The notes: a model not told the origin generated them from the sequence alone. A stretch of 64,000 nt of DNA from IMGVR_UViG_3300040801_001224:1-64000, one strand, 5' to 3'. Positions 2,542 through 60,173 are shown, numbered from the stretch's first letter. Translations and numbers: made by a program.

Positions 2542-2570
2542 TTGACACAACCACTTTTCCACTGTATAAT
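2542..2570 (+). promoter_or_regulatory. sigma70-type promoter giving a probably leaderless mRNA
   Basis: TTGACA-N17-TATAAT; ATG 6 nt after the -10 box. Confidence 0.85.
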
Positions 2571-2576
2571 ATAAGT

Positions 2577-2825
2577 ATGGATATTCCCGTACTCAATCTA
2601 TTTGAAATAAACTATGAAATAGCTGATAAGACGAAAGAAGACAGCTTAATTAAAACTGATCAAGCAGAACTATTCACTGGTATACTTGATCTAGAAGAAC
2701 AGTTGAATGGCAGAAGATATGCTCCCGTAGTTAATGGACGTATAGTAACAAAGGAAGTCTTAATAGAACATTTAAATCTCTCAGACGAAGACTTATTCAA
2801 GTATAGACTGGAAGGACTCTTATGA
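2577..2825 (+). CDS. hypothetical protein, family A
   Basis: Ends SDEDLFKYRLEGLL. Confidence 0.8.
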   Translation: MDIPVLNLFEINYEIADKTKEDSLIKTDQAELFTGILDLEEQLNGRRYAPVVNGRIVTKEVLIEHLNLSDEDLFKYRLEGLL

Positions 2826-3100
2826 AGTTCATATACGTGATAAGAGATACAGATATAAGTAAAGTCAATAACTTATTAGAAGAAGAACTGGGCCATATCC
2901 CATCGTACGAACGTTCCCCATATGATGAAGGTCAAATGTATATGCCATCCATATATAAAGTTACGTATATACTCGGGGAAGAAGAAGAACTATATCTAAG
3001 ACTTAGGTGGGGAAATATCAGTAACTTTGGCCCATATATAACATTTATGATGAGAAAGAACAGTATATATGCTTATGATAAACATAAATTCATTAAATGA
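2822..3100 (+). CDS. hypothetical protein, family A
   Basis: EEEELYLRLRWG. Confidence 0.8.
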   Translation: MKFIYVIRDTDISKVNNLLEEELGHIPSYERSPYDEGQMYMPSIYKVTYILGEEEELYLRLRWGNISNFGPYITFMMRKNSIYAYDKHKFIK

Positions 3101-3187
3101 TATCTATATAATGGGCAGAATCATTAGAAAATATCTTAACGATGCGATACTGGTAAAAATGGGCATGGCTCGGCTGGGGAGAAAAAG

Positions 3188-3412
3188 TTGAAAAAACTAT
3201 ATGTGACTGCGTCAGATCTAGAGTTAGCCGAGCTCTATCTATATAAGAATAACCTTGAATACGTGGTGGTAGAAGTTAAACCAATAGTAGCCGAGTCAAG
3301 AGTTCCCATATATGAAATAAACCTATTAGAAGATGAAGACGCAATGATGTTCGAAATACTCGGGGGAGAACCTGAGTTCAGAGACAATCTAATCAAATGG
3401 TGGGAATCATGA
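3188..3412 (+). CDS. hypothetical protein, family A
   Basis: EDEDAMMFEILGG; TTG start after GGGGAG. Confidence 0.75.
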   Translation: MKKLYVTASDLELAELYLYKNNLEYVVVEVKPIVAESRVPIYEINLLEDEDAMMFEILGGEPEFRDNLIKWWES

Positions 3413-3857: not shown

Positions 3858-3992
3858 CCATAGCAGTACCGCCTGTTCATGGTTTAGTGATCGTGGGGTA
3901 ACTTCCTTATAGATAATCCACATGATCAGTTGTCTATTAGAAGATCAATACTATAGAGACTTTAATATACTGAGTCATGTATAAATACTTAT

Positions 3993-4259
3993 GTGACGGA
4001 ATCTTTTATAATACACAGTGGCAACATAGAGCTCATTCGAATAGCTGTTCACCGGGTATTGTCTGATTATGCCGTTGATTCCATAAACCTAGATCCAATC
4101 AGTGTCCCCCATCATTATAGTCGCACTCGAGTCACCGTATTGTTTAGTGATGCTGAATGCCACTTAGCTTATCGTATACGTTGGGATGATGCCAGTATAG
4201 CTACCCATACACAGAGTGTTATGTACCGTATGGTGTCTCAGAAGTATAACCTAGATTGA
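3993..4259 (+). CDS. hypothetical protein, family A
   Basis: FSDAECHLAYRIRW; GTG 5 nt after TATAAATA. Confidence 0.65.
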   Translation: MTESFIIHSGNIELIRIAVHRVLSDYAVDSINLDPISVPHHYSRTRVTVLFSDAECHLAYRIRWDDASIATHTQSVMYRMVSQKYNLD

Positions 4260-4358
4260 TTCACCTACCTGGATTAGCCAATCGGATTCACCTAGATGGA
4301 TCGTTCAGTCAGGTCATTTCGCTGGAATGAATCAGATGGATGGGCCAGTCGGTCAGTC

Positions 4359-4388: not shown

Positions 4389-4391
4389 TTA

Positions 4392-4420
4392 TTGACAAAA
4401 AAATTTGGTTGTGTTATAAT
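4392..4420 (+). promoter_or_regulatory. sigma70-type promoter, probably leaderless
   Basis: TTGACA-N17-TATAAT; ATG at 4427. Confidence 0.85.
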
Positions 4421-4426
4421 GTCTTT

Positions 4427-4768
4427 ATGGATGATTCAAATAAATTAATTTATGAGATAGATAATTTACAATGGTCGCCGTATGGATCCATACGACCTAT
4501 TGGTCATGATGGCGATTATAATAATAAGCGTTATGTATTCAATGGTGTTCGTCATATTATACGGGAAGTATTTAGTGAGCAAGGTTATGAAGTTGGTGAA
4601 ATCATTATACGGGAAATTGATACGAGTTTTAAGACCCAGTTCATAATATACCTGGAGAGTGCCGAAGACCAGTTTGCTTGGATCATGACAGATACTGATG
4701 TCATTAGTGAAAGAATAGATGATGAAGTCGAATCTTTTCTTGACATGATGGCCCTAAAGAGTATATAA
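4427..4768 (+). CDS. hypothetical protein, family A
   Basis: LESAEDQFAWIMT; the track start at 4340 runs through the promoter. Confidence 0.75.
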   Translation: MDDSNKLIYEIDNLQWSPYGSIRPIGHDGDYNNKRYVFNGVRHIIREVFSEQGYEVGEIIIREIDTSFKTQFIIYLESAEDQFAWIMTDTDVISERIDDEVESFLDMMALKSI

Positions 4769-5867: not shown

Positions 5868-6302
5868 TCATTTAATAATGAACTTAGGGCGTTTAGATTT
5901 CTCTCCAGGCGCCCGTATGTAATACTTATCGGGACGTTTTCCATATGTTTCGGTAAGCTTAGGACGGTCTTTAACTACAGTATTCTGTATATAGTCTTTA
6001 GATAATAAAACTTTCTCCATTATAACTGAGCCATACTTACCACCGGTCTTTAAGTTATATGTGTCTGGACGCAACACATAGTATTCGTCTACATAATACT
6101 CTTCACGCTCTTCAGCAGTTTCCCGATCAGTAAATACTTCTAGTATACGTTTAATAAAATATGGTCTATCATTGTTATAAGCCCATGTAACAAATGTCCC
6201 GCTACCCATATAGTCATCATTCTCTGGGTCTACTGCTGAGCGGACGCCGATGTATTCCATGTTTGTTTTAGTGTTTATTAGTTTATAAATATAATGTTTC
6301 AT
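5868..6302 (-). CDS. GIY-YIG (Seg-like) homing endonuclease
   Basis: HYIYKLIN...EYIGVR...YMGSG...YNLKTGG; start MKHYIYK. Confidence 0.85.
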   Translation of the reverse strand: MKHYIYKLINTKTNMEYIGVRSAVDPENDDYMGSGTFVTWAYNNDRPYFIKRILEVFTDRETAEEREEYYVDEYYVLRPDTYNLKTGGKYGSVIMEKVLLSKDYIQNTVVKDRPKLTETYGKRPDKYYIRAPGEKSKRPKFIIK

Positions 6303-6380
6303 AATAATACTTATCATATGTACGATCAGTTATGTAGAGTGAACGGTTGACTTCCGGTCTACCATTTGCTATAATGTGTT

Positions 6381-6671
6381 ATGGATCTAAAAGAAGAAAA
6401 CTTTAGTATATACGTTGCGCTAGTAAGCTTTACCCTATCTCTGGGTGCTATCGTGTGGCTTCACTGGTGGGTTGGCATTGTGACATTCATCTGTTGTGTG
6501 ATTGGCTTTGCCATATTCGTAGACCGTTACTACACTAAAGAGATTAAGATTATATCCCCATTCCCAGTTAAGCTTGAAGGCCAGTGGCGATTTGTGTTCT
6601 ACGTTATACGTGGTAGCTATATGGTAACACCCGAGCGGCTATTGATGGATAAAATTAAAAATAGTGGTTGA
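6381..6671 (+). CDS. membrane protein
   Basis: Two hydrophobic segments; TTGACT-N17-TATAAT ends 5 nt before the ATG. Confidence 0.75.
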   Translation: MDLKEENFSIYVALVSFTLSLGAIVWLHWWVGIVTFICCVIGFAIFVDRYYTKEIKIISPFPVKLEGQWRFVFYVIRGSYMVTPERLLMDKIKNSG

Positions 6672-6720
6672 CATCCACTATTAATGTTGTTATACTTCTG
6701 GAAATAGTTAGGAGAAACAC

Positions 6721-7005: not shown

Positions 7006-7069
7006 AAATAGTGGTTGACACGACCACTTCTTGATAGTATAATGGTTCTAAACAGTTAGGAGAACAATT

Positions 7070-8373: not shown

Positions 8374-8583
8374 ATGAAATTTAATCATAGCGAATTAAGT
8401 AACGCATTAGAAACACACCTACTCAATGTAGAAGATTGTAATCTACTTGATTACGATGTGGACGGTGTACTGAACAATAAGGTTCTTGGTACAGTGGGAT
8501 TTGAAGCCATCGACGGACATAGCTCATGGGAGGCAGAGTTCGAATATAACATGGTTACAAAAAAAGTAGAATCAATTGGATAA
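8374..8583 (+). CDS. early hypothetical protein
   Basis: Own promoter and SD. Confidence 0.8.
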   Translation: MKFNHSELSNALETHLLNVEDCNLLDYDVDGVLNNKVLGTVGFEAIDGHSSWEAEFEYNMVTKKVESIG

Positions 8584-8650
8584 GTGGTTGACAGGACCAC
8601 TTTCTGATAGTATAATGTCGGTTATCAATTAAACAGTTAGGAATAATTAT

Positions 8651-22557: not shown

Positions 22558-22737
22558 ATGTTAGTTAAAGAACTTATAGAAATATTAGAAGGCCTCAATC
22601 CCAACCAGGAGTTAGAGATTAGAGCTGGCAAGTATCTAAAAGAGCTGAACATGTTACACACAGAACAGTATGAGTTCCGGGATGTATATGTTAGAGATGA
22701 TAAACGAGCCGTCATAGTATTTGAGGAGGCCCGATAA
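22558..22737 (+). CDS. 59-aa paralogue of the previous gene (not in ORF track)
   Basis: MLVKELIEILEGL...AVIVFEEAR; SD AGGA. Confidence 0.7.
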   Translation: MLVKELIEILEGLNPNQELEIRAGKYLKELNMLHTEQYEFRDVYVRDDKRAVIVFEEAR

Positions 22738-22745
22738 ATATATGT

Positions 22746-22955
22746 ATGTATATAGTGAGTAAGGATAAAGAGTATATAGAGAGGCTTGGGCTAGAGTACC
22801 AAGTCCTCTTTGATTATGCCATAGCCAGAGTTTCCGGCAGTGACGCAGTACACTATAACATGCAATTCCCAACACTGTTTCTCAGTGTACAAAAAGAAGC
22901 CAGATCGGCAGCCGTAGAATATAACAAATATTTAAGAAAAATTGGAAAAAACTGA
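22746..22955 (+). CDS. hypothetical protein
   Basis: ATG 5 nt after ATAAATA. Confidence 0.65.
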   Translation: MYIVSKDKEYIERLGLEYQVLFDYAIARVSGSDAVHYNMQFPTLFLSVQKEARSAAVEYNKYLRKIGKN

Positions 22956-23066
22956 CCCAAGGGGACTGTGTGCCGAAAAGGGGTATCGGGCGGAAAGGGA
23001 GCTACAAAACGACGCGAAATTTTTACCTACATCGAAGAGTCTTCAAACTCCCCGGTAAATATGCGT

Positions 23067-23234
23067 ATGTCCACTATACTATTCATTTTTCTATTCACCT
23101 GTATAATATACTCCACTATACTCTTCTCTATGGAACCGGACACCATACAACCAAAGTCTCTATATTCTCTTTCATTATTACTGGGCTTAACACTTGTCTT
23201 ATCTGTAAAAATAATATTTGGAATTCTTCTCTAA
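23067..23234 (+). CDS. small membrane protein
   Basis: ATG 5 nt after GTAAATA; two TM segments. Confidence 0.5.
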   Translation: MSTILFIFLFTCIIYSTILFSMEPDTIQPKSLYSLSLLLGLTLVLSVKIIFGILL

Positions 23235-27540: not shown

Positions 27541-27731
27541 GTTATTACCGTAGGGTTCACGTTAAAAACAAATATAAGATAGACCCGAACATTGCTAACT
27601 TCATGTTTGAGAGTTGGTTAGTTAATAACAATATAGGTTTTGAGAAGTTCAAAATTATAGACCTCAACACCGTTGACGTCTGGTTTCGCAGTAAGCAAGA
27701 TTATTTTATATACGAAATGCTTAAGCCTTAG
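27537..27731 (+). CDS. hypothetical protein, family A
   Basis: WFRSKQDYFIYEML. Confidence 0.7.
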   Translation: MSYYRRVHVKNKYKIDPNIANFMFESWLVNNNIGFEKFKIIDLNTVDVWFRSKQDYFIYEMLKP

Positions 27732-28473
27732 GGTCCTTGCGCTCTATATCATCCTCGCGAGTTTCTTCACCGTACTGTATTTCAATGATGTGGCATGGCT
27801 TCTTGCTGTTATTAATTAGTTGATGCCATTCTCGCTTCTGTATCTGATGAGTGTCATGCTTACGTAAGTTCACACTATACCCTTCACGACGAACAGTACA
27901 CTCTCCCTTACTGACAAACCATAATTCACTGCGTAGTTGGTGTCGTTGGTAGCTCAATGATTTGCCTGGCTCTACTATTAGTTCCTTTACCTTAACTTCA
28001 CTATCAACAAAGTAATTATAAAACCTACCCCACTGCCGTGTTTCAAAGTCTTCACTTGCCGCATTGCGTATTAACCAGCTTGACGAGTTTAATTTATCTT
28101 CACCGCCTACTCCAAACTCAAACTCAACACCACTAACACTCATTTCAGGAATGTTTTCTGATGTACGGTCACCGCCATTACAGAATACAATGTCATTATG
28201 TGGGTAGTCACGCTTTACGTCTTCAATTAACGAACAACATGATTTGTCATCAGCCATTGGCACTATACGTACTTCGTCTACCATTTCTAGATGCTTAACG
28301 ATATTGACACGTTCACTCTCAGACATAAACGTTTTGCCTTTCTTGTCCATGATCCACTCGTTAGAATTAACACCAACAATCAAGTAGTCACCAAGCTTTT
28401 TTGCGGCCTTTAGGTAACTCAAGTGTCCTTCGTGAAGGGGATCAAATCCGCCAGTACATATAGTAATCTTCAT
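27721..28473 (-). CDS. cytidylyltransferase-like domain fused to a mannose-6-phosphate isomerase type II cupin
   Basis: TGGFDPLHEGH (HxGH); RQWG, LSYQRHQLRSELW, IIEIQYG, EDDIER. Confidence 0.9.
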   Translation of the reverse strand: MKITICTGGFDPLHEGHLSYLKAAKKLGDYLIVGVNSNEWIMDKKGKTFMSESERVNIVKHLEMVDEVRIVPMADDKSCCSLIEDVKRDYPHNDIVFCNGGDRTSENIPEMSVSGVEFEFGVGGEDKLNSSSWLIRNAASEDFETRQWGRFYNYFVDSEVKVKELIVEPGKSLSYQRHQLRSELWFVSKGECTVRREGYSVNLRKHDTHQIQKREWHQLINNSKKPCHIIEIQYGEETREDDIERKDPKA

Positions 28474-28505
28474 ACCCATATTTATGCCAGTAGGTAAATA
28501 ATACT

Positions 28506-28865
28506 ATGATGAAATGGATTATAGCACTTCTTTTATTAGTGTCCACTAATGTTCTTGCTGAAGATTGTTTATACGAGTATGACATAGACACACGAAAAAA
28601 ATTCCTCAAATGGTATCCTGTACTCAGCATTAACTACTGGCCCTACTGGTATATGATGTACAACAATGACTCCGGATTAGAAAACACAATATGGGATAAT
28701 GATGTTGGTGGTGGCCTACAGTTCGGTGTACGGTATGATTTTGATGATGACCGGGGTTATTTAGAATTCAAACAAGAGTATGCCACCATGCCTATCAGTA
28801 GTTACGAATTTATAATCTCTGACGAAGAACCCATCATAATTTTTGAATTTCATAGATCATTTTAA
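28506..28865 (+). CDS. secreted, possibly outer-membrane protein
   Basis: Signal peptide ending VLA; aromatic beta-rich sequence; C-terminal FEFHRSF. Confidence 0.65.
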   Translation: MMKWIIALLLLVSTNVLAEDCLYEYDIDTRKKFLKWYPVLSINYWPYWYMMYNNDSGLENTIWDNDVGGGLQFGVRYDFDDDRGYLEFKQEYATMPISSYEFIISDEEPIIIFEFHRSF

Positions 28866-28886
28866 CACCGACCGGTAAATAATATT

Positions 28887-29066
28887 ATGCTTACTAATAT
28901 TAAATATTATAGAAAGTCCAAGGGTGGCGTCTGGTATAGGGACGGTGCCAACAAATGGACTCACGCTAAAACCAAAGAAAAAGCACAAGCTGAACTAGAG
29001 CAACTACGTGCCCTAGAACCATTTGGCCACGCTTTCCTAATCGAAGAAATCGAACACTACGTTTGA
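28887..29066 (+). CDS. 59-aa hypothetical protein (not in ORF track)
   Basis: MLTNIKYYRKSKGGVWY...; ATG 5 nt after GTAAATA. Confidence 0.65.
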   Translation: MLTNIKYYRKSKGGVWYRDGANKWTHAKTKEKAQAELEQLRALEPFGHAFLIEEIEHYV

Positions 29067-29123
29067 CAACGCCACTTTTTTGTGCTACTATAAGTAGTAC
29101 ATGTTCACTAGGTAAATATCTAT

Positions 29124-29333
29124 ATGAAGAAAATCGGGTTGGGGTATTTTATTCATGCGTTATTCTGGTTTTCCATGGGTGCCTTATTATTAGGACAACC
29201 CTGGAAGGAGAAGAGAGAACCTGTTACTATAGGCCATGAAATGTGCCTAACAGAAGATAGAGACCTAGAAGCAGTTGTTCACGTCAAGAAGATAGACTTA
29301 ATCAAAGTCGTATGTAAACCTCAGAAAGATTGA
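29124..29333 (+). CDS. membrane-anchored small protein
   Basis: N-terminal TM; Cys pair; sigma70 promoter at 29063 and GTAAATA at 29112. Confidence 0.7.
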   Translation: MKKIGLGYFIHALFWFSMGALLLGQPWKEKREPVTIGHEMCLTEDRDLEAVVHVKKIDLIKVVCKPQKD

Positions 29334-46678: not shown

Positions 46679-46679
46679 T

Positions 46680-46796
46680 CTATCCTCGTTTTTCCAGTAT
46701 AGTTTTATTCTTGGTCTTGTCCTTGATAACGATTTTATCAATAACTTTGCCATCAATTAGTAGAGTATTCTTGTTGTCTTTTTTATTTGTAATCAT
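46680..46796 (-). CDS. 38-aa protein (not in ORF track)
   Basis: MITNKKDNKNTLLIDGKVIDKIVIKDKTKNKTILEKRG; ATG 6 nt after ATAAATA; resembles the N-terminal strand of the 45426 gene. Confidence 0.6.
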   Translation of the reverse strand: MITNKKDNKNTLLIDGKVIDKIVIKDKTKNKTILEKRG

Positions 46797-46822
46797 TGCT
46801 ATTATTTATCACTCTTTTCCTT

Positions 46823-49800: not shown

Positions 49801-52800
49801 TTATAATTTGTCCTGAACCAGCAGTATCATCAACATAAAAACCAAAGTCATTGTTGTTCTCAATTGTTGGTGCGAACAGTATTGTGTTGCCATCATTTAA
49901 TTGTGATATAGACATTGTTCCATTGCCATAATCAGTGACAAGGTTATATATGTCCCATGTATCGTTAAGTGTGCGGGCTATACCAACATTAACGTAATCT
50001 GTTACATTAGTGCTTACTAATGAATCACCGCTAAATGTTAGTTCACTTAAGTCTTTAGTGTTCAGTGGACCTGCTGTTGGCATTACTGCCATTGGTTCGA
50101 TCATGCTCCATAGCCCAGTCTTATCACAGCCACGTGTTGGTTTTGTTAACCAACTTTCAGTGTCATCCTTGTCGATTAATACTAGATCATCTGCTGGATC
50201 ATCTTCAGTGACTTCATATCCTAAAATAGCAATAGCACGGTCTACACCACCATCCCAGGGTAGTGCTGACCAACCATCAGGTTCAACTGACGGATCCCAC
50301 TCCACTAAAGGAATGTAAACGTTAGGTTCCTGTGTATAGCCTGAACCTGGATGTGTTACTTCAATACTTGCCACTTTGCCGTCATCACCCAGTATAGCAA
50401 CGGCTTGGGCGTGATCTGTAATTGGATTAGTTTCATTAATGGAAGGTCTTATTTCAATTAATGGTGGCTCGCTGTATGTTGATTCAACATTAACTAGCAC
50501 AACTTCCTTAACAAAACCAGATGTTTCTGGGTTAATATCTAGCTGAACAATCTGTGGATTTGTTTTAATTTGTCTAGGATCAATAGCTAGGTCTAACTGC
50601 TGTGTTGTACACGTAGCGCCTGAATGGCCTAAACGTAACGCAAATTCTTCAAACACCTCAATAGTCTGATCAGTGCCATCTACAATGTTTGTAGAGCGTA
50701 GGATTTTATTAATCGCATCCTCTGTACCCTTCTGTCTCACAACGCCCTGGTAGAACTGATACTGCGTATCCTGGCGGATGTCTAGATCAACTAAGTAATC
50801 TCTATTCTCAAAGCCAATAATGTGACGTGCTGTATCCTCAACTTCCTGTCTGTCTAAACGTGATTCTGTATCGTGGAATCTACGGATGGATTCAGCAAGT
50901 GTATCCAAGTTTGGAATTAAGCGGTTGTCATCTGTGATAACATAACCAGGTGCTTCACGCTTACCACTCCAGTCTAGGGTACGTGGACCAATGAAACGTA
51001 GGCGGTTTTGTCTAACACCTAGCAATGGATCGTAAATAATGTCTGCGAATGATGTCTTGTTATCAAATGTCACACGATGTTCTGTTTCAGTAGCGTACAC
51101 ACGTAATAGGTATATGCCACGCTGATCTTGGTTCAATGGCTTAACATTTACCGTAAAGTCATCACGCTCAACAACTAGGTCTTTGGCTTTAATCTCAAAT
51201 CCATTTTCGTCTAATATACTGTATACACCGTTGTATTGTATTTTCAAGTCACCTGCGTATCCACGTGCTAGGTCTAGTTTTGTGTAACGACTCGATGGGC
51301 TCAGACGTATTGCTTGACCTGGTGCCCAGTTTGCTGTTACCCAGAATAAGTATTCCTTGGCAGACTCTAGCCAATTCTGTAAGCGGTAATTTATGTTATC
51401 TGTTTCATCAAATTTCCATCCAACAGCTTCTAAATAGTCACCATAACCGATTAAGAAATCAAATACTTCTTGTTCTGTTTGGAAAATTGTACCATAAGGG
51501 ACTGTCTGTATTACGCCCTGCTGGCCACGCTTTGTGTATGAAACTTCAATACCACCTGTTGATGGCAACTTGCTTAATCTATTCCAGTTGTCATCATCGA
51601 AACTTCCAGGTGCTAGGTCTTCTTTAGCAGAATAATAGACACCATTGTATTTTACAATGTCGCCTTTCTGGTACGCGACACCTCGGTCGAATAATGTAAA
51701 TGGTGCTTCGTCATTGCCCACTCTTACTTCTTGTTTAGGAGCAAACTGATCACGTGGAATAATCTTAAAGTTATTGCTGATGATGTCGTAACCGAAGACT
51801 CTGTAAGAGCCATCTTCTTGAGCCAACACAACAACGCCTGAATATGTGTATTCATCAATAGCAGGTGATGTGTGTATGTTTGTCTCAACGTTTTCTTTTG
51901 GAATTAATAATCCGTTTGTAGTTGACTCAGCACTTGTTCCTTCTAGGAATGTTTCAATAGTATCTGGGTTAGTGAAGCCGCCCATCTTATGCCCTAGCTT
52001 AACGCCTAAACGTCTTACTTTGTCGCCTAGTTCTGATTTAATTGTGCGAGCGTTGAAGAATAGACCATCAGCAATCCATTGTTGATAACCTTCTCTGTAT
52101 ACTAATTCGCCATCAATTAATTCACCATGTACTGATAGTGAACTGTACTTTCTTCTGTCCAAAGTTTCTGCGCTGATATGTTGCGACGGTTGCGCTAATG
52201 ATGTTGCGTTGTCGTTCGTATCCCAGAATCTGTAACCAAATTGTGCTGGACGCATAAGGAATAAGAATTCCATTACTGCGAACGGATAAACTTCTGTGTT
52301 CATCCAACCTGATTCGGTAGGAGCTTGGTCACCAATTAACCAACTGTTATCGCTGTTAGTCGTTAGAACGTAGTCAATATCAATTTCATCTGGTGATAAC
52401 AGATCACCACTGGCGTCAACAGGTATTACCATTCCTGGACGAGCAAAGCGTGAGTCAACGCCTTGGCGTGAGCCCATTCGTATGATGCCAGCTTCTAAAT
52501 CGGACCACATGCCAGTATTAGTACTTGTGTAATTTCCTAGATACTGAACGTCCCACCAGTCCGGCTTCTTAGCAAAGCCTAGCATCTCCCATGGGTGAGT
52601 GTGAGGGCGGAATGTATCATAGAAGTATTGGTATAACCCTTTCCAGTGTCCAGGTACGCCATGCTCACTGTAGTTCCAGGTCTTCCAATCACCTGCGTCA
52701 AACGTTGTGTTGTCTTGCCATTGGGCGTTAACATTGTTCGACCATTTGCTGAATGACTGACTATAAACAGAAACATATTCACCATAGCTGTATTGCGTAT

Positions 52801-55579
52801 CACGGAATGCGCCTGGCTTGATATCTTCTTTTGTTAGTGGCGGGATATAGTCACCTAGGAATTTTTCATTAATTCCATTATAAATTCTTGTTTCAAATTC
52901 TAATATTAGATCGTCAATAAAATCACTACCAGTTGATGGTGTGCGTGAGCCATCGTGGCCCACGATGACATCCATTGGAGTAACAAAAGATGTGTCAGTT
53001 GTTTTCTCTGGAGTATATGTTTGGTACATCCCTAACTTAGACGGTGTGGCTGGAACAAATGCTGGCTCAACATTTTCATAAATATAAAATTCAGCCGTTT
53101 CGCCAGCCAATACACTGAAATCAAACACAAGTTGGTCGCCAGTCACAGTAAATAACTCTTGTTCTATATGATTGCCGTTAATGTAGGCATAAACTTGGTT
53201 GCTTCTATCCGTTAAATCAACATTCTTGGATAGTGTGAACGTGTCTGTATCTGCTAGGGGCGTTTCACTATCAATAGTTGGTGTGCCCCAGGCAAACATA
53301 TATGAATACTGAAATGCTTCGTCAAATTGTGTGCCGTTTGTTAGGCGTGTAATTACTTCATCAAAGTTTGAACGTGCTGTGCCAAAGCCTGCTGTTTCTA
53401 TTTCTAGTTGACGTGCTTCCTTAATGAATCTATTCTTATAGCGTGTATATTCTTGTGACGCAAATCGTATGGCAGTCACAACATCTAGCTCTTTACTTGA
53501 GCTTGATAGCATTGCTAATGGCAATGGATCACGTGTTTGTAACATATATGTGCCAAGACTGTTGTCCTGACAAGTATCACGGAAGTTATTGCTCGCACCT
53601 AATGCTTGGCCAGTGAATCCTGGTTGATTCTCAATAATACTTACAAAGTGTTTGTACATATCATTCTGTGAGTATTCAACTACTTCACTGTTGCCTGCGT
53701 TATTTTCTAATGCGTCTGGAATCTCATAATAACCACGCGATCCTAAATCTTTATTTCCATTTTTATAAGAGTAAAACTCAATAACATCATTAGCTTTGGT
53801 TGATGTGCCGATTGTTACTGATGTGCCATTTACAGAGAATGTATCCTCTAGGACACCGTTTACTCTTACAGTTAGATCATCTGGAGTTTGACTAATAACA
53901 AACGTGTCGTTGCCATCCTGTGTTACAACATAACGATCAATAACATTTTGTTCTGTCTGGCCTAACACTAGAGAACTTTCAGTGTCAGCAGTGTCAAATG
54001 ATTCCTGAGCCGCCCACGTAGTTTTTAGTTCATCATTTATTTTGTAGTAGTAGAAGCCTGGGATTTCTGTTGGGTTGTCTTCCACTGATTCCTGAGTAGT
54101 TGCTCTAACAGCTTCTAAATCATGTTCAAATACAATGTCACCCACCTGACCCAGTCCAGTGAATTCTAACGGGAAACCTAACTCAGTGTCGTCTACAATG
54201 CTGTATTCGTTTACCTTATAAGAGAATATTTCGTTGCCAACAAACGATGGAAAGCTATATGTATTTTCGTCATCCAACGCCACACCATTGCTGTCATATA
54301 AACTGTATAAAGGTGCTTGGTTAATGCTGAACTTTTGATTGGCAACTTGTAGCCAACGTCCACCTGACACGTAATCAACACCTTCGAAGTAGTAGGTGTA
54401 CCCAGCGTAATTCTCACCGCTTTCAACAATAACAATATTGTCTTCACCTAGTAATGTACTCAGTGTTAGATTAATGATACCACCGGTTGTATCTACGTCA
54501 TATATTCTACCATTAGCTTCAATTAAAATCTTGTCACCAGTCACAAGGTTTGAGTTGTCAACTGTGACATCGCCGACTATGGCGCCTTCTAGTTCAGAAA
54601 ACGTCAGGGTATCTTCCACATAATCAATATAGTCTAGGAAGTTTCTGCCAGATTTATATAGTTCAATGTTTTTCTTAAATTCTATAATTGGGCGTGACGC
54701 AACTACGTATGCGCCAATTTCTTCTTCAAGGAACGCTAGAACACCAAACACTAAATCTCTATGATACCAACGGTTAGTGCGTGACCAAGCATTGTTGTCT
54801 TGTGCGCCACGTTCAATAGTAATGTAATCAAATGGTAAACTTGTTTTAATAGCATCCCAGGGTAGCTGATCCCAGAATCCATTTTCTGTAGAAACGTTTT
54901 GCCCACTCAACTCTGCTCCACCATCCCATGGTAAGAATTCAAATTGGTCGAATGCCGTTAATGGATTTGGCAGAGGGACAAGCTCAATGCCACAACCAAC
55001 GCCTTCAAGAATATATTCTTCACCTGCGTTAGCTGGGTTATTAAATGTAACGTGTATACCTGAACTTGCTTCAATCGTTTTGCTGTCAACTGTAATTGTA
55101 TAGTTTAGTTGGCCTTCGATGTCAGCAGGCGTCACAGTAGGGTCTAACTGAATAGTAGGCAAGTCATTTGTCATCCACAAATAGTTCTGATAGTTAATGA
55201 ACTTGTCAGCATCAATTGGCGGAGCGAAACTATAAGGTGTTGTTTTAAATAAGCGGTCGTGGTTGTTAATTAAACCGTTATGTTGTTTAATGTAGTTTAG
55301 GAAGTCCTCATAGAACATCACATTAGTTTCTTCTAATGTATCCGGATCACGTGAGAACGCAATAGGCTCTAATTGATAATCCACACGATTAAACGAACCT
55401 TCACTCAGAAAATAATCATTCTGTGGATCATAACGGCCGCCTACTCGACGTCCAATCCAACCAATTTCAGTATCAGCTTGCTTCTTCTGAAATAGTTGCT
55501 CAAATGTTGCTTCAAAGAATTTCTTCTGTGTGTCAGTTTGTAATACAACCGGTAATTGGCTTATTATTGTATTCTTCAT
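46823..55579 (-). CDS. very large baseplate wedge/structural protein (gp7-like position)
   Basis: 2918 aa; follows the gp6-like gene; YVNEVKPYQSKVR motif; PWD repeats. Confidence 0.8.
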   Translation of the reverse strand: MKNTIISQLPVVLQTDTQKKFFEATFEQLFQKKQADTEIGWIGRRVGGRYDPQNDYFLSEGSFNRVDYQLEPIAFSRDPDTLEETNVMFYEDFLNYIKQHNGLINNHDRLFKTTPYSFAPPIDADKFINYQNYLWMTNDLPTIQLDPTVTPADIEGQLNYTITVDSKTIEASSGIHVTFNNPANAGEEYILEGVGCGIELVPLPNPLTAFDQFEFLPWDGGAELSGQNVSTENGFWDQLPWDAIKTSLPFDYITIERGAQDNNAWSRTNRWYHRDLVFGVLAFLEEEIGAYVVASRPIIEFKKNIELYKSGRNFLDYIDYVEDTLTFSELEGAIVGDVTVDNSNLVTGDKILIEANGRIYDVDTTGGIINLTLSTLLGEDNIVIVESGENYAGYTYYFEGVDYVSGGRWLQVANQKFSINQAPLYSLYDSNGVALDDENTYSFPSFVGNEIFSYKVNEYSIVDDTELGFPLEFTGLGQVGDIVFEHDLEAVRATTQESVEDNPTEIPGFYYYKINDELKTTWAAQESFDTADTESSLVLGQTEQNVIDRYVVTQDGNDTFVISQTPDDLTVRVNGVLEDTFSVNGTSVTIGTSTKANDVIEFYSYKNGNKDLGSRGYYEIPDALENNAGNSEVVEYSQNDMYKHFVSIIENQPGFTGQALGASNNFRDTCQDNSLGTYMLQTRDPLPLAMLSSSSKELDVVTAIRFASQEYTRYKNRFIKEARQLEIETAGFGTARSNFDEVITRLTNGTQFDEAFQYSYMFAWGTPTIDSETPLADTDTFTLSKNVDLTDRSNQVYAYINGNHIEQELFTVTGDQLVFDFSVLAGETAEFYIYENVEPAFVPATPSKLGMYQTYTPEKTTDTSFVTPMDVIVGHDGSRTPSTGSDFIDDLILEFETRIYNGINEKFLGDYIPPLTKEDIKPGAFRDTQYSYGEYVSVYSQSFSKWSNNVNAQWQDNTTFDAGDWKTWNYSEHGVPGHWKGLYQYFYDTFRPHTHPWEMLGFAKKPDWWDVQYLGNYTSTNTGMWSDLEAGIIRMGSRQGVDSRFARPGMVIPVDASGDLLSPDEIDIDYVLTTNSDNSWLIGDQAPTESGWMNTEVYPFAVMEFLFLMRPAQFGYRFWDTNDNATSLAQPSQHISAETLDRRKYSSLSVHGELIDGELVYREGYQQWIADGLFFNARTIKSELGDKVRRLGVKLGHKMGGFTNPDTIETFLEGTSAESTTNGLLIPKENVETNIHTSPAIDEYTYSGVVVLAQEDGSYRVFGYDIISNNFKIIPRDQFAPKQEVRVGNDEAPFTLFDRGVAYQKGDIVKYNGVYYSAKEDLAPGSFDDDNWNRLSKLPSTGGIEVSYTKRGQQGVIQTVPYGTIFQTEQEVFDFLIGYGDYLEAVGWKFDETDNINYRLQNWLESAKEYLFWVTANWAPGQAIRLSPSSRYTKLDLARGYAGDLKIQYNGVYSILDENGFEIKAKDLVVERDDFTVNVKPLNQDQRGIYLLRVYATETEHRVTFDNKTSFADIIYDPLLGVRQNRLRFIGPRTLDWSGKREAPGYVITDDNRLIPNLDTLAESIRRFHDTESRLDRQEVEDTARHIIGFENRDYLVDLDIRQDTQYQFYQGVVRQKGTEDAINKILRSTNIVDGTDQTIEVFEEFALRLGHSGATCTTQQLDLAIDPRQIKTNPQIVQLDINPETSGFVKEVVLVNVESTYSEPPLIEIRPSINETNPITDHAQAVAILGDDGKVASIEVTHPGSGYTQEPNVYIPLVEWDPSVEPDGWSALPWDGGVDRAIAILGYEVTEDDPADDLVLIDKDDTESWLTKPTRGCDKTGLWSMIEPMAVMPTAGPLNTKDLSELTFSGDSLVSTNVTDYVNVGIARTLNDTWDIYNLVTDYGNGTMSISQLNDGNTILFAPTIENNNDFGFYVDDTAGSGQIINYGYVVVNDIVYRYERQSDSLGPLKLFDATGEEVQLTDFELTDEVKVFSSRRFTVLPAFDPGFEGDILYVEDDSTVYTATATEFTAVRRWDNQRVNTKIIKNAFVYEADTKDTLALVNIYDPVKGFIPGIAEQNIDIKSYTDPARYTNSDNESRINESLRFTKRDVGKTWLDLSSFAYYDYEQDDMRYRRERWGKQVPGSDLSVYEWVESLNPPASYDGAGTPRNTTDYTVESVFNDDAGFEVNYYYFWVRGLATRPENDKNRTLSIANIEQLMNNPKAQGYQWFSPIDTDKFVFANLEDLFENNEAVFQINYKDTDKDTNLHVEWYLMGDGNRNSPVKDIHWDKMTDSLVGFTKTISTADMPYIVNLPGAYLLGTDDDNPGETLYQLAVPNPALSVAEKYGTENRPRQSWFIDKQAARKVFTQKANDLFANMESFDATDFSNWVSTSNYWIINDEGNVEILSTLYTDYILEDLRSELREILDAMRNHVFIGDDFVKQNELMFAMINYVLSEQKDVDWVFKTTYVTLNQEAIPLEQAPTLVNDPFESLLEYVNEVKPYQSKVRDYKNAFKTLDLVEATVTEFDNKLVKMRFNRVECPELAEDELPGYECQEWINYINADDFITPSIPWDILPFDEEDWDGDAPVVYYEAAGLVPDTFEPGAPLLSLTGDQFVDSISPGTVEFDLSTETATQDIDYSVMGVYLNGEQLLNYYIYNSTVYIMAEDLLPTDVIDIYEVILPEGDFFLDPLYRAGNPQELVPMKMHEGVVLDVRTQGVTVTLPGSNIGEYPVVRGFTEVRVDGVPRTDYTFEEPEAWDQEAWDSGSEDWDNSFLAIQFDGEPDQTGSTVEIDYPEVNYRQHVNMSGLMTYERKSRCNTTLAADFAQGDIEVELTDASVMPEATVATPQVAWIGQEKITYRGIDGNTLVGVNRAERNTAEISIRPAGTDVWIGGESEMIIGGEQALWTDNFASIVYGLPNTLALSGTNIGTFLRGCP

Positions 55580-58500: not shown

Positions 58501-59414
58501 TCTTCCAACACTGATCCATTATCATTTACTTTTTGTACATAGACATCATCATTGTTGATGTTAGATGCTGGAATTTCTTCTGTTCTATTTTCTAATGGAA
58601 ATGCGTATTGGTAATCGTAATTATTTAATGTTCCTTGTTTGAAATGTAAGAAGAAACCAGTGTCAGCTGAACCTAATCCATTATTGTCATTTCTATATAA
58701 AATGTGCATCGGGTTTTCTGGATTTGGATGACGCTCAAAAAATGTTTCACCATCTGTGAAATCAGTATTGACAATATCAACTGGGTATGACTCGCCTTCA
58801 GAAGAAATCGTTACAGGGTAAGTAACTGTTGAGAATGGTGTCGTATTAACTCTATAAAGATGCGTCTTAATGCCACCAACTGTGCCTTTCTTAAATGGTT
58901 TACCAAATGTATTCGTTTCTGAAAAAGCCGCGTTCATTATTGCGATAATTTGTTCATATGAATTTGGGTTATTGGCATCGTTCCAGATAATTGTTCGTCC
59001 AGTTAGGTCAACACCTAAACTGTCAGTTAATGTTTCTGTAGTTGACACTGAATATAGTTTGAAGAGACCTTCTGCTGGTATGTTACGCTTAGGCTGATAA
59101 CTAACCATACGTGCTAAACGTATGATACTTTCACGTCTTTGTGCTGTGTCTAAAAAGTTCTCACGACTGTTAAGGTCTGTTCTGAACGCAAGTGACGTAC
59201 CTAAGTACGCAAGCAATTCAATTACCGCTATAAATTCCGAGCTTTCGATATAATCGTTAAAGTCTTCTGGGAAGTTTTCTCTGATATACTCAACTAAAGA
59301 GTCCTTAATTGTGTCAAAGTCATAGGCTTGGAAGTCTACATTTTTAAAACTCTGATAGATTTTAGTAAAGTCTTCTGCGGCAAATAAATTGGACTGTCTA
59401 ACTGACTGACTCAT
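55584..59414 (-). CDS. baseplate wedge subunit (T4 gp6-like)
   Basis: YDFDTIK...FNDYIESS..IELLAY...RENFLDTAQRRESI; QDRMVNNEDY. Confidence 0.9.
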   Translation of the reverse strand: MSQSVRQSNLFAAEDFTKIYQSFKNVDFQAYDFDTIKDSLVEYIRENFPEDFNDYIESSEFIAVIELLAYLGTSLAFRTDLNSRENFLDTAQRRESIIRLARMVSYQPKRNIPAEGLFKLYSVSTTETLTDSLGVDLTGRTIIWNDANNPNSYEQIIAIMNAAFSETNTFGKPFKKGTVGGIKTHLYRVNTTPFSTVTYPVTISSEGESYPVDIVNTDFTDGETFFERHPNPENPMHILYRNDNNGLGSADTGFFLHFKQGTLNNYDYQYAFPLENRTEEIPASNINNDDVYVQKVNDNGSVLEEWTQVPSVVGSNIAYNNIALDVKTVYSVISGFNDSITIKYSDGNFGEVPKDSMRVWARTSANTNAVFRPADVGVKTVSMPYIAKSGREHLLTIQFTLETTVSNQALSETTDDIRENAPQVFYTQDRMVNNEDYNVFPLTRGNEIAKTRVVNRTHSGHSRFIDIQDPTGQHSDIVLFAEDGSIYREEDNSRTSIDIPDTITTEEIIDDLQAQLESVKLRTFFYDEYLKQYKTIYGDSEFSYTPGSGDERDVTWVTLPGTSQNDTGYLSSPASVDPGNTLGYITVTTSDYKFIRQGAKLKFVDPSDSTNQKWVTVRTLDDFGIVSNVSPTGPFTLSAEVETGWDLVEVIPFFRTELSDEEKFGSVNNPDSIAAAIATEQPFGLRYDISGAGDQWFVIANDNIALGAAFDLSTAGDTNGGQDASWLLEADYTVNEALVFPVYNVTTRGLAYVFESSEEIRFFFEPEQQILDIETGKALQDEIVLLDLNNKSTYVEEYIYNSLSGRWEEETLGLSFPGNGGGAQTGYITLRERDATPTIDAGTLTYNLANGIVGITATPANGDVITIAYENPEKLSEPVRWNISDTFIMADGYVDQRKVKIVPVDSDEDGVPDNPMAFDELVNQQTDIVYFERFTDFDEYEYFRVWGARKAIGVITAYDASDAVTTDVTLAVRLEILTADGNQLFGDVDLIELPAGVTITDFVDELNSYTNLEEDGGIAGKVVIDENGAFYDIVGSVNTNPGVENNFASQDDIDHYTRIGRDHYADNGEQDPFFYKWLHYAPAENRIDPSISNIQDMLILTQTFYDDTLVWKKESGALADQPEPPTTEELRVQFSDLNNFKMLSDQIVFESAKFKLLFGDNADEQLRANFKVVKLPNATLSDNEIKSSVVDAIDEFFNIANWDFGEAFYYTELAAYIHQQLQKSVASVVIVPTDAESEFGNLFQIRAEVNELFLSTATVNNIDIVKSLTDTNLRIR

Positions 59415-59777
59415 TTATGATTCCTCTGTAAAATTTAAGTAAAGGACGTCTGATATGTCACCAGGAACGTATTGTAACTCAACTACTAGTTCAACTAAAT
59501 GTTCTTTTTCATTAACGTTCATGCCAATAAATTCTACCCTTGGATCTGCATCAAATACTTCAAGCAATTCTGACTCAATAGTTTCTAATAACCCTTGAGT
59601 TTTTGGCTCGAATATGTAAAGCGGGATGTTAGTTCCGAATGTAGGCATCATCACTCTCTCACCACGTCTCGTATGAATATGGTTTGTTAGGTCACGCTTG
59701 ACAAGTTCTAAGTCACGTAATGTAAACGGTGGCTTAATTTGATCAACTGTGTTAAAACCTTTGAATGTTGCTGACAT
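59415..59777 (-). CDS. baseplate wedge subunit (T4 gp25/GPW-like)
   Basis: TRRGERVMMPTFGT...DPRV; GATAAATA promoter at ~59805-59812. Confidence 0.92.
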   Translation of the reverse strand: MSATFKGFNTVDQIKPPFTLRDLELVKRDLTNHIHTRRGERVMMPTFGTNIPLYIFEPKTQGLLETIESELLEVFDADPRVEFIGMNVNEKEHLVELVVELQYVPGDISDVLYLNFTEES

Positions 59778-59839
59778 CTTATTATCCTTTGTTATATATT
59801 AACTTATTTATCAACCAAATTAACCACTGTTATAATAGG

Positions 59840-60173
59840 TTGACAAGACCACATTATATCCAGTATAATAGTGTTATGTTTACATATAGCGGCATTGTTG
59901 TTCCAGATCTTTATGAAATAGAAAAGCGTTTGCTGGATAATGGATTAGTTTTTCAGGAAGGAAATACCTTCCATTGCTTCTCTGAGTATCTGGATGAAGA
60001 TAGATTTGCCATGATCCTAAAAGATAAAAAGCCAGTATTGTTTGAAAACGAGTCTGCTATTATAAGAGCATTGGGCGGGCATTCGGACAGGCCAGTCTAC
60101 AGCATATCTGTAAAAAACTTTCAGATAATAGCTGAAGAAGTAGGTTGACAAGACCACTTATAATTGCTATAAT
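59840..60173 (+). promoter_or_regulatory. two early-type promoters inside the late module
   Basis: TTGACAAGACCAC..TATAAT at 59840-59869 and 60145-60173. Confidence 0.85.
59876..60148 (+). CDS. hypothetical protein (family A-like motif)
   Basis: ATG 6 nt after TATAAT; DEDRFAMILK. Confidence 0.7.
   Translation: MFTYSGIVVPDLYEIEKRLLDNGLVFQEGNTFHCFSEYLDEDRFAMILKDKKPVLFENESAIIRALGGHSDRPVYSISVKNFQIIAEEVG

What the first reader, a model, noticed from the sequence alone, without database searches (positions are those of the whole stretch)
2542..59878. Systematic leaderless gene starts from both promoter classes
Seen: the T4-late-like motif RTAAATA is followed by exactly 5 nt and then the start codon at 3981 (GTG 3993), 22734 (22746), 23055 (23067), 28494 (28506), 28875 (28887), 29112 (29124) and minus-strand 28485 (28473). 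The variant ATAAGTA does the same on the minus strand at 6314 (6302), and 46809 has a 6-nt gap (46796). Sigma70 -10 boxes are followed by ATG after 5-6 nt at 2577, 4427, 6381 and 59876. There is no room for an SD. Established: T4 gp55-dependent late promoters are TATAAATA with +1 a few nt downstream.
Basis: partly seen in the sequence, partly recalled or inferred. Interest (0 to 1): 0.6.

Follow-up and report, generated by a model that had tools for sequence, protein, structure and literature searches.

The report
Leaderless gene cassettes in jumbo phage
About one gene in ten of this uncultivated 328-kb phage sits so close behind a promoter that its mRNA should begin at the AUG start codon with no ribosome-binding leader; the sequence pattern is real and statistically strong, but no RNA data exist to confirm the start sites.

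Summary
The window is the first 64 kb of a 328,096-bp phage genome from a microbial mat, distantly related to Pseudomonas phage PA5oct.

- **Late motif:** its true form is G[AG]TAAATA. It is followed by ATG after exactly 5 nt at 28 of 125 sites (2.45 expected, p=1.6e-21).
- **Sigma-70 promoters:** TTGACA-N17-TATAAT is followed by ATG after 6 nt at 19 of 184 sites (3.6 expected, p=5.6e-9).
- **Start codon:** both peaks are ATG-specific, and the ATGs open real ORFs.
- **Gap distribution:** it is bimodal. Gaps are 5-8 nt, or at least 16-17 nt with a Shine-Dalgarno sequence, with nothing between.
- **Geometry:** the 5-nt and 6-nt gaps equal the known distance from each promoter type to +1. Leadered promoters of both classes prefer T then A at that same position.
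- **Sigma factor:** a gp55-family late sigma is encoded just outside the window.

"Systematic" overstates it. About 48 of 480 ORFs are leaderless-configured, and most genes use a Shine-Dalgarno sequence. Two listed sites (GTG 3993, 46796) are doubtful.

The arrangement recurs in some environmental relatives. It is absent or at background in T4, PA5oct, CBB, Atu_ph07 and SCTP-2. No transcription start could be mapped because no RNA runs exist. I rate it a new member of a known kind, of moderate interest.

The parts
2542..2825 (+). Sigma-70-type leaderless cassette: -35 TTGACA 2542-2547, 17-nt spacer, -10 TATAAT 2565-2570, 6-nt gap, ATG 2577, 82-aa ORF
   Evidence: 12/12 consensus
4392..4768 (+). 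Sigma-70-type leaderless cassette: -35 4392-4397, -10 4415-4420, 6-nt gap, ATG 4427, 113-aa ORF (an in-frame ATG at 4340 would place the promoter inside the ORF)
6347..6671 (+). Sigma-70-type leaderless cassette: -35 TTGACT 6347-6352, -10 6370-6375, 5-nt gap, ATG 6381, 96-aa ORF
59840..60148 (+). Sigma-70-type leaderless cassette: -35 59840-59845, 18-nt spacer, -10 59864-59869, 6-nt gap, ATG 59876, 90-aa ORF (in-frame ATG also at 59765)
22733..22955 (+). Late-type leaderless cassette: GATAAATA 22733-22740, 5-nt gap, ATG 22746, 69-aa ORF. The upstream gene's TAA stop lies inside the motif.
23054..23234 (+). Late-type leaderless cassette: GGTAAATA 23054-23061, 5-nt gap, ATG 23067, 55-aa hydrophobic ORF (not called by my crude gene caller; in-frame ATG also at 23061)
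27721..28486 (-). Late-type leaderless cassette on the minus strand: CATAAATA 28486-28479, 5-nt gap, ATG 28473, 250-aa cytidylyltransferase-like gene. Homologs start at the same Met.
   Evidence: (residues 1-113 match profile 1-106)
28493..28865 (+). Late-type leaderless cassette: GGTAAATA 28493-28500, 5-nt gap, ATG 28506, 119-aa ORF. It is divergent from the 28473(-) cassette across a 32-nt intergenic region.
28874..29066 (+). Late-type leaderless cassette: GGTAAATA 28874-28881, 5-nt gap, ATG 28887, 59-aa ORF. No terminator-like site upstream.
29111..29333 (+). Late-type leaderless cassette: GGTAAATA 29111-29118, 5-nt gap, ATG 29124, 69-aa ORF
5868..6315 (-). Variant motif ATAAGTA 6314-6308, 5-nt gap, ATG 6302, 144-aa homing endonuclease with a GIY-YIG-like N-terminus (MKHYIYKL...). 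An in-frame ATG also lies at 6317.
   Evidence: phrog_314, E 1e-27
3980..4259 (+). Doubtful site: TATAAATA 3980-3987, 5-nt gap, GTG 3993, 88-aa ORF. GTG at gap 5 is at background frequency genome-wide.
46679..46810 (-). Doubtful site: GATAAATA 46810-46803, 6-nt gap, ATG 46796, 38-aa ORF ending just before the SD-led ATG at 46678. It may be a small leaderless ORF or the 5' leader of the next gene.
59775..59812 (-). Comparator in the window: a leadered late promoter, GATAAATA 59812-59805, with a 27-nt leader carrying AAGGA, then ATG 59777 of the gp25-like baseplate gene. In many environmental relatives the ortholog is leaderless.

Best explanation
**What it is.** This is an uncultivated jumbo phage of 328 kb, distantly related to PA5oct and Rak2-like phages. 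It uses two promoter classes. The first is the host sigma-70 type (TTGACA-N17-TATAAT). The second is a T4-type late class (G[AG]TAAATA with no -35 element), presumably read by its own gp55-family sigma.

**The arrangement.** In about 48 compact cassettes, the promoter is placed so that the predicted transcription start is the A of the ATG. That means a 6-nt gap after TATAAT and a 5-nt gap after TAAATA. The mRNA would therefore begin with AUG and carry no Shine-Dalgarno sequence.

**Inferred mechanism.**
- Translation would occur by direct binding of ribosomes to the 5'-terminal AUG, the established route for leaderless mRNAs.
- An internal AUG without an SD is poorly used. Each such gene would then be translated only from transcripts that start at its own promoter, and not from read-through transcripts of the densely packed, mostly co-oriented upstream genes or tRNA precursors.
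- The effect would be tight early or late timing, probably modest expression, and a saving of 20-30 nt per cassette.

**Shown versus inferred.**
- Shown: the sequence pattern, its statistics, the promoter identity of the motifs, the gp55 homolog, correct start codons for several genes, and recurrence in relatives.
- Inferred: the actual TSS, translation of the leaderless RNAs, and the gating role.
For: 1. **Enrichment.** There is a sharp, ATG-specific peak at one gap per promoter class.
2. **Bimodal gaps.** Gaps are 5-8 nt, or at least 16-17 nt with an SD.
3. **Class-specific offset.** The 5-nt and 6-nt gaps equal the known -10-to-+1 geometry of gp55 promoters (PMC7892883) and sigma-70 promoters. 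Leadered promoters here show the same T(-1)A(+1) preference at that position. In T4, 81% of the bases at TATAAATA+6 are purines.
4. **Real ORFs.** 32 of 36 RTAAATA-N5-ATG sites open ORFs of at least 50 aa.
5. **Start codons.** They are corroborated by homolog N-termini for 28473(-). Profile matches also begin at residue 1 for 28473(-), 277761, 178319, 139741 and 269438.
6. **No SD.** None of the 48 leaderless starts has an SD-like 4-mer.
7. **Late sigma.** A gp55-family late sigma is present (phrog_12791, E 4e-73; T4 gp55, E 4e-6). ATAAATA is already proposed as the late promoter in the relatives CBB and GAP32 (PMC5259590).
8. **Recurrence in relatives, with diverged spacers.**
   - gp25-like and 72-75-aa membrane-protein genes carry ATAAATA-N5-ATG in many IMG/VR contigs.
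   - Exonuclease orthologs carry a TTGACA-type promoter with an N6-7 gap before ATG.
   - Relative G003 has 13 sites at gap 5.
9. **Compact context.** Intergenic space is 31-42 nt for 13 of the 19 sigma-70 cassettes. Upstream stop codons lie inside the -35 hexamer or inside the late motif. No terminator-like site separates the three successive cassettes at 28.5-29.3 kb.
10. **tRNA island.** Eight late-type and one sigma-70-type cassette lie among the tRNA genes at 263-277 kb.
Against: - No TSS, RNA or proteomic data exist. Only DNA runs of one microbial-mat study hold the sequence.
- The host is unknown, so the efficiency of leaderless translation in it is unknown.
- Most leaderless-configured ORFs are small ORFans with no PHROG match, so some may not be genes.
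- Several sites have an alternative in-frame start nearby (4340, 59765, 6317, 23061).
- In six late cassettes the upstream stop is only 4-8 nt from the ATG, so reinitiation could also explain translation there.
- The gating idea is untested. Leaderless genes are not significantly less conserved than other small genes once size is matched.
- The 5' ends are not significantly less structured than those of SD-led genes (p=0.085).
Confidence: 0.72

Rival explanations
1. The motifs are promoters, but these ATG-initiated ORFs are translated mainly as internal cistrons of longer read-through transcripts. Translation would occur by termination-reinitiation or SD-independent initiation. The exact promoter-ATG spacing would then reflect only packing of a promoter that serves downstream genes.
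For: - 31 of 48 cassettes follow a co-oriented gene, and 4 follow a tRNA gene.
- In six late cassettes the upstream stop lies 4-8 nt before the ATG.
- No terminator-like site lies between the cassettes at 28.5-29.3 kb.
Against: - 13 cassettes are divergent from their neighbour, so no upstream co-transcription is possible. Two such pairs share only 32 nt of intergenic DNA.
- Packing alone does not predict one exact gap per promoter class, or ATG-only starts.
- Packing alone does not predict the empty range of gaps 9-16.
Confidence: 0.12
2. The ATG is part of the promoter's preferred initiating sequence (a T-A-T-G initiation context) rather than a start codon, and many of the small downstream ORFs are not genes.
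For: - Most cassette ORFs are 55-170-aa ORFans with no PHROG family.
- Leadered promoters also prefer T then A at -1/+1.
Against: - 32 of 36 sites open ORFs of at least 50 aa.
- Leadered promoters show no T/G preference at +2/+3.
- At least 15 cassette ORFs match protein families: exonuclease, metallophosphoesterase, NUDIX, UDP-glucose dehydrogenase-like, QueC-like, cytidylyltransferase-like and homing endonucleases. Several alignments begin at residue 1.
Confidence: 0.06
3. TAAATA-N5-ATG is an AU-rich translational signal on leadered mRNAs, for example an S1- or phage-bS21-dependent enhancer that replaces the SD, and not a promoter at all.
For: - The motif is AU-rich and lies at a fixed distance from the ATG.
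- The phage encodes a bS21 homolog.
Against: - The identical motif lies 17-45 nt upstream of 50 genes that carry their own SD.
- The phage encodes a gp55-family sigma.
- The parallel class has a complete -35/-10 consensus at its own class-specific gap.
- Relatives' papers assign ATAAATA as the late promoter.
Confidence: 0.05
4. The pattern is a chance or compositional artefact of an AT-rich genome.
For: The genome is 40% GC, and TAAATA and TATAAT are common words (495 and 434 copies).
Against: - Binomial p=1.6e-21 and p=5.6e-9 against the genome's ATG frequency.
- Neighbouring gaps serve as an internal control.
- T4, PA5oct, CBB, Atu_ph07 and SCTP-2 show background counts for the same pattern.
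Confidence: 0.01

Closest known systems
Thermus phages phiYS40 and Lalka27a (leaderless phage transcripts)
   Same: [quoted passage not shown]
   Different: - In those phages most transcripts are leaderless, and the host phylum uses leaderless mRNAs widely.
- Here only about 10% of genes are leaderless-configured, and the rest use a strong SD.
- Here one of the two promoter classes is the T4 gp55 type.
- Here nothing has been mapped experimentally.
T4 late promoters (TATAAATA, gp55/gp33/gp45)
   Same: - The -10-like element has the same core and no -35 element.
- A gp55-family sigma is encoded.
- The motif-to-+1 distance is the same (PMC7892883).
- Homing-endonuclease genes sit under late control (for T4, from my own knowledge).
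   Different: - T4 has no ATG within 12 nt of any of its 32 TATAAATA copies; all are leadered, with a mode of 28 nt.
- The consensus here is G[AG]TAAATA rather than TATAAATA.
- The sigma here is 302 aa against 185 aa in T4.
- No T4-like gp45 was detected by sequence.
ATAAATA putative late promoters of Rak2-like jumbo phages (CBB, GAP32) and sigma-70-like promoters of PA5oct
   Same: The same motif classes have been predicted in the nearest cultivated relatives (PMC5259590; bioRxiv 10.1101/406421).
   Different: - Those reports do not mention leaderless starts.
- RTAAATA-N5-ATG is at background in CBB and PA5oct.
Leaderless genes predicted from a -10 box about 10 nt upstream of the start codon (Zheng et al. 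2011, PMC3160421; GeneMarkS-2, PMC6028130); lambda cI from PRM
   Same: The inference logic is the same, and so is the presumed translation route through a 5'-terminal AUG (Brock et al. 2008, cited). The lambda cI example is from my own knowledge.
   Different: Those cases are cellular genomes or single phage genes. Here there are two promoter classes with different exact offsets in one phage genome.

Membership tests
Leaderless transcription unit | A -10-type promoter element at a fixed distance that places +1 on the start codon | tested here: met
   Gap 5 after G[AG]TAAATA occurs at 28 of 125 sites (p=1.6e-21). Gap 6 after TATAAT in full sigma-70 promoters occurs at 19 of 184 sites (p=5.6e-9).
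Leaderless transcription unit | No Shine-Dalgarno sequence and no 5' UTR | tested here: met
   None of the 48 starts has an SD-like 4-mer at 3-12 nt. Only 5-6 nt separate the promoter from the ATG.
Leaderless transcription unit | Strong preference for AUG as the 5'-terminal start codon | tested here: met
   32 ATG, 2 GTG and 1 TTG at gap 5. 18 ATG, 0 GTG and 0 TTG at gap 6.
Leaderless transcription unit | The mapped transcription start coincides with the start codon | not testable with these tools
   Only three DNA runs from one microbial-mat study hold the sequence, and there is no RNA run.
Leaderless transcription unit | The protein N-terminus is at that Met | tested here: inconclusive
   Homolog N-termini agree for 28473(-). 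Profile matches start at residue 1 for five genes. Most of the others are ORFans.
T4-type (gp55-dependent) late promoter | A TATAAATA-like -10 element with no conserved -35 element | tested here: met
   G[AG]TAAATA has 95 intergenic and 30 coding copies. The base-frequency tables show no conserved upstream element.
T4-type (gp55-dependent) late promoter | A phage-encoded gp55-family sigma factor | tested here: met
   G000 65476-66384 matches phrog_12791 (E 3.7e-73), phrog_234 (E 9e-22) and T4 gp55 (E 3.9e-6).
T4-type (gp55-dependent) late promoter | gp45 sliding clamp and gp33 co-activator | tested here: inconclusive
   Neither T4 gp45 nor Pfam PF09116 finds a match. gp33 was not searched. CBB also lacks detectable homologs of both.
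T4-type (gp55-dependent) late promoter | Late timing, upstream of structural genes | not testable with these tools
   The motif precedes the gp25-like baseplate gene. No expression data exist.
Sigma-70-type promoter | -35 TTGACA, 16-18-nt spacer, -10 TATAAT | tested here: met
   98 sites have at most 1 mismatch of 12 with a 17-nt spacer, 94 of them on the + strand. The consensus scan reports 12/12 matches.
Globally leaderless phage transcription (phiYS40/Lalka type) | Most transcripts are leaderless | tested here: not met
   About 48 of 480 ORFs are leaderless-configured. About 300 have a clear SD. 50 late and 61 sigma-70-like promoters are leadered.

The most novel reading that the evidence does not exclude
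Leaderless placement may be a deliberate 'promoter-gated translation' device in a clade of environmental jumbo phages. Accessory genes would be translated only from transcripts that begin at their own early or late promoter, and would stay silent on read-through RNAs. Such genes include four homing endonucleases and the ORFs wedged between tRNA genes. The effect would match what T4 achieves with RBS-sequestering hairpins, but with a 16- or 35-nt self-contained cassette that can be dropped anywhere. The phage bS21 homolog might further tune ribosomes toward such mRNAs.
Probability: 0.3. Interest if true: 0.65.

Novelty: new member of a known kind. Interest (0 to 1): 0.45.

Why it matters
- **Annotation.** Gene callers that rely on an SD would mis-start or miss these genes. 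They would extend 4427 to 4340, 59876 to 59765 and 6302 to 6317.
- **Scope of leaderless expression.** If the start sites are confirmed, T4-type gp55 late promoters and consensus sigma-70 promoters would both drive leaderless mRNAs in a phage whose other genes use a strong SD. Leaderless expression would then be a selectable design choice for particular genes, not a property of the host phylum.
- **Practical use.** The cassettes would be very compact, timing-specific expression modules.
- **Evolution.** The graded occurrence across relatives gives a system for studying how leadered and leaderless states interconvert. Counts of the late motif followed by ATG at gap 5 are 28 here, 13 in G003, 2 in G001 and none in T4, and PA5oct is at background.

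Tried and rejected
- **Near-identity search.** A megablast of 12 kb against the phage collection found nothing.
- **Host inference.** The phage bS21 gave one weak hit against species genomes, 37% identity to a Clostridia MAG. This is uninformative.
- **Other factors.** T4 gp45 and Pfam gp45-slide_C gave no match, and IF3_C gave no match.
- **Less structured 5' ends?** The trend in the first 30 nt was not significant (p=0.085).
- **Smaller genes?** Not significant (p=0.13).
- **Less conserved genes?** 12-15% of leaderless genes have a homolog in two relatives, against 28-30% of other genes (p=0.057 and 0.011). The difference is not significant after size matching.
- **Are all homing endonucleases leaderless?** No. 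Two GIY-YIG genes (66471 and 260373) have leadered late promoters.
- **Literature.** Searches for leaderless with gp55, T4-like, jumbo phage or PA5oct found no prior description of this arrangement in the searchable library. That is not proof of absence.
Full report
**What the window is.** The window is bases 1-64000 of a 328,096-bp virus record with direct terminal repeats, 40% GC, and 88% of predicted ORFs on the + strand. No near-identical phage is in the phage collection. The 1276-aa baseplate wedge protein is 42% identical to that of Pseudomonas jumbo phage PA5oct. It is 35-40% identical to those of Salicola SCTP-2, Agrobacterium Atu_ph07 and the Rak2-like phages. The only public runs holding the sequence are three DNA runs of one microbial-mat metagenome study. 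The host is unknown.

**Check of the observation.** The pattern is far beyond chance genome-wide:
- [AG]TAAATA is followed by a start codon opening an ORF of at least 50 aa 35 times at a 5-nt gap, against 0-4 at the other gaps 0-17.
- TATAAT is followed 18 times at a 6-nt gap, against 0-4 at the other gaps 0-11.
- Both peaks are ATG-specific: 32 ATG, 2 GTG and 1 TTG for the late motif, and 18, 0 and 0 for TATAAT.
- 32 of the 36 raw RTAAATA-N5-ATG occurrences open long ORFs.

The true late motif is one base longer, G[AG]TAAATA. It has 95 intergenic copies and 30 coding copies in a genome that is 90% coding. Of its 125 copies, 28 have ATG at gap 5, where 2.45 are expected (p=1.6e-21). Of 184 sigma-70-like promoters, 19 have ATG at gap 6, where 3.6 are expected (p=5.6e-9). 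The tool's own consensus scan reports 12/12 matches at 2542-2570 and 4392-4420, and 11/12 at 6347-6375.

**Are the motifs promoters, and is the ATG at +1?** Four arguments support this.

1. *The same motifs also occur at leadered distances.* 50 G[AG]TAAATA copies lie 17-45 nt upstream of genes with a visible SD, and 61 sigma-70-like promoters lie 15-60 nt upstream. Assignable late sites have gaps of 5-8 nt or at least 17 nt, with none at 9-16. Sigma-70 promoters have none at 7-15. This is what a fixed +1 predicts: a leader is either absent or long enough to hold an SD.

2. *The two classes have different offsets, and each equals the known geometry.*
   - The cryo-EM structure of the gp55 open complex places the flipped adenines at -12, -9 and -8. 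TATAAATA therefore spans -13 to -6, and +1 is the sixth base after it (PMC7892883).
   - For sigma-70, the hexamer spans -12 to -7 and +1 is the seventh base after it (established knowledge).

3. *Leadered promoters show the same initiating dinucleotide at that position.*
   - Late promoters: A in 78% at motif+6, with T or A before it.
   - Sigma-70 promoters: T in 54% at hexamer+6 and A in 67% at hexamer+7.
   - Many early promoters share the initial sequence A-TAAGTTAAA, starting exactly at hexamer+7.
   - In the leaderless sites the base before the ATG is T in 84%.
   - In T4, purines make up 81% of bases at TATAAATA+6.

4. *The phage encodes a gp55-family late sigma* at G000 65476-66384, just outside the window (phrog_12791, E 3.7e-73; T4 gp55, E 3.9e-6). 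ATAAATA has already been proposed as the late promoter of the relatives CBB and GAP32 (PMC5259590).

**Are the ATGs real start codons?**
- No leaderless-configured start has an SD-like 4-mer at 3-12 nt (0 of 48). The remaining genes show a clear SD peak at -11.
- For the 250-aa cytidylyltransferase-like gene at 28473(-), 19 of 21 homologs in other viral contigs begin at the equivalent Met or Val, as M/V-K/R-[IV]-x-V-V-S-G-G-F-D-P.
- Profile alignments start at residue 1 for 28473(-), 277761, 178319, 139741 and 269438.
- The gene at 6302(-) starts MKHYIYKL, the usual position of a GIY-YIG motif.
- Caveats: 4427, 59876, 6302 and 23067 have in-frame ATGs a little upstream. Most cassette ORFs are ORFans of 55-170 aa.
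- Two listed sites are doubtful:
  - GTG 3993, because GTG at gap 5 is at background.
  - 46796, with a 6-nt gap and a 38-aa ORF ending just before the SD-led ATG at 46678.

**How widespread is it in this genome?** My crude gene call of 480 ORFs gives 29 late-type and 19 sigma-70-type leaderless configurations, about 10% of genes. About 296 have a clear SD. So the arrangement is recurrent but not systematic.

The cassettes are very compact:
- 13 of the 19 sigma-70 cassettes have an intergenic distance of 31-42 nt. In five of them the upstream gene's TGA stop lies inside the -35 hexamer (tTGAca).
- In six late cassettes the upstream stop lies inside the motif or spacer.
- Two divergent pairs share 32-nt intergenic regions.
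- Eight late-type and one sigma-70-type cassette lie among about 25 tRNA genes at 261.5-276.3 kb. Some start about 20 nt after a tRNA 3' end.

Identified products include three homing-endonuclease-like genes in that island plus the one at 6302(-), and NUDIX, QueC-like, exonuclease, metallophosphoesterase and UDP-glucose-dehydrogenase-like proteins. All six homing-endonuclease-like genes I found sit behind late-type motifs. Four are leaderless and two are leadered.

**Relatives.** Counts of RTAAATA-N5-ATG equal the reversed-pattern control in PA5oct, CBB, Atu_ph07, SCTP-2 and T4. T4 has no ATG within 12 nt of any of its 32 TATAAATA copies.

Environmental relatives do show the arrangement:
- In the 80 best of at least 585 IMG/VR loci around the gp55-like gene, 23 sites have RTAAATA-N5-ATG. 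Most precede orthologs of a gp25-like baseplate protein or of a 72-75-aa membrane protein. Their spacers and flanks have diverged, but the gap is conserved.
- In this genome the gp25-like gene (59777(-)) has instead a 27-nt leader behind GATAAATA, so the two states interconvert.
- About 16-28 of 54 distinct exonuclease orthologs carry a TTGACA-type promoter 6-7 nt before the ATG. Others have short SD leaders.
- Whole-genome histograms give 13 (+5 at gap 6) of 67 GRTAAATA copies in a 340-kb relative (G003), and 2 of 76 in a 363-kb relative (G001).
- Only 7 and 6 of the 48 cassette proteins have homologs in those two genomes. The ortholog of 141054 is leaderless in G003, and those of 157764 have a 6-nt gap in both relatives.

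**Mechanism.** The best-supported reading is that these are leaderless transcription units from both promoter classes.

It is established that ribosomes bind leaderless mRNAs through their 5'-terminal AUG (Brock et al. 2008, cited). Some phages express most genes this way: phiYS40 and Lalka27a. phiKZ and AR9 do not.

I infer that the arrangement couples translation to initiation at the gene's own promoter. On read-through RNAs from the many co-oriented upstream genes or tRNA precursors, the internal AUG has no SD. T4 achieves a similar coupling for some late genes with RBS-sequestering hairpins (my own knowledge, not tested here). This gating role is a hypothesis. My tests of 5' structure, size and conservation gave no significant support for or against it.

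The rival explanations are reinitiation on polycistronic RNA, ATG as part of an initiating motif, an AU-rich translational enhancer, and chance. They are weighed in their own section of this report, and none accounts for the class-specific gap, the ATG specificity and the divergent pairs together.

**Novelty.**
- Leaderless genes and their prediction from a -10 box are known (PMC3160421, PMC6028130).
- Leaderless phage transcripts are known.
- The ATAAATA late motif is known in relatives.
- I found no description of gp55-type or consensus sigma-70 promoters abutting the ATG in T4-related or jumbo phages.
- I therefore file it as a new member of a known kind, supported by sequence only.

**Limits.**
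- Gene calls come from my own simple codon-usage caller, and SD assignment picks the best SD among candidate starts.
- No RNA, proteomic or host data exist.
- Read laying was not used because no RNA run exists.

Noticed in passing
window 6660-6682, 7007-7040, 8580-8615 and dozens more across G000: There are 98 near-perfect sigma-70 consensus promoters (at most 1 mismatch of 12), 94 of them on the + strand. About half carry an inverted repeat AGTGG...CCACT(T) that brackets the -35 hexamer and is followed by a T-rich run. This could be a terminator/promoter hybrid or an operator.
   Followed up: partly
G000 266270-266347 (L016:4270-4347): ARAGORN calls a tRNA with a four-base anticodon (tttg) inside a tRNA island of about 25 genes at 261.5-276.3 kb.
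   Followed up: no
G000 184216-185698 (L205:204-1698): A ribosomal protein bS21 homolog (PF01165, E 1e-14, 90 aa) lies directly after a ClpX-like 409-aa ORF. Its nearest match in species genomes is only 37% identical, to a Clostridia MAG. A link to leaderless translation is speculative.
   Followed up: partly
G000 178284, 255691, 291972, 316003, 321535 (-35 hexamers); window 22738-22740: The stop codon of the upstream gene is embedded in the next gene's promoter. In five sigma-70 cassettes the TGA lies inside tTGAca. In six late cassettes the TAA or TAG lies inside or just after TAAATA.
   Followed up: yes
window 28471-28508; G000 135288-135325: Two head-to-head pairs of late-type leaderless cassettes share 32-nt intergenic regions. 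Their two -10-like elements are 10 nt apart on opposite strands, so the two promoters probably compete for polymerase.
   Followed up: partly
G000, all G[AG]TAAATA sites: Leaderless and leadered late sites differ in their flanks. The base before the G is T in 70% of leadered sites and 20% of leaderless sites. The GG variant makes up 32% of leaderless sites and 8% of leadered sites. These may be strength or timing subclasses.
   Followed up: no
window 46679-46796 (-): A 38-aa ORF lies behind GATAAATA with a 6-nt gap. It ends one base before the SD-led ATG at 46678 of the gene downstream of the 2918-aa protein gene. It could be a small leaderless upstream ORF or just a leader.
   Followed up: partly
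window 6302(-); G000 66471, 260373, 267218, 270823, 274434: All six homing-endonuclease-like genes found lie behind late-type motifs. Four are leaderless and two are leadered.
   Followed up: yes
window 46823-55579 (-) and 34578-37283 (-): A 2918-aa ORF lies next to the baseplate wedge gene, and a 901-aa ORF has an N-terminal protease-like match (phrog_3677). Neither was characterised further.
   Followed up: no
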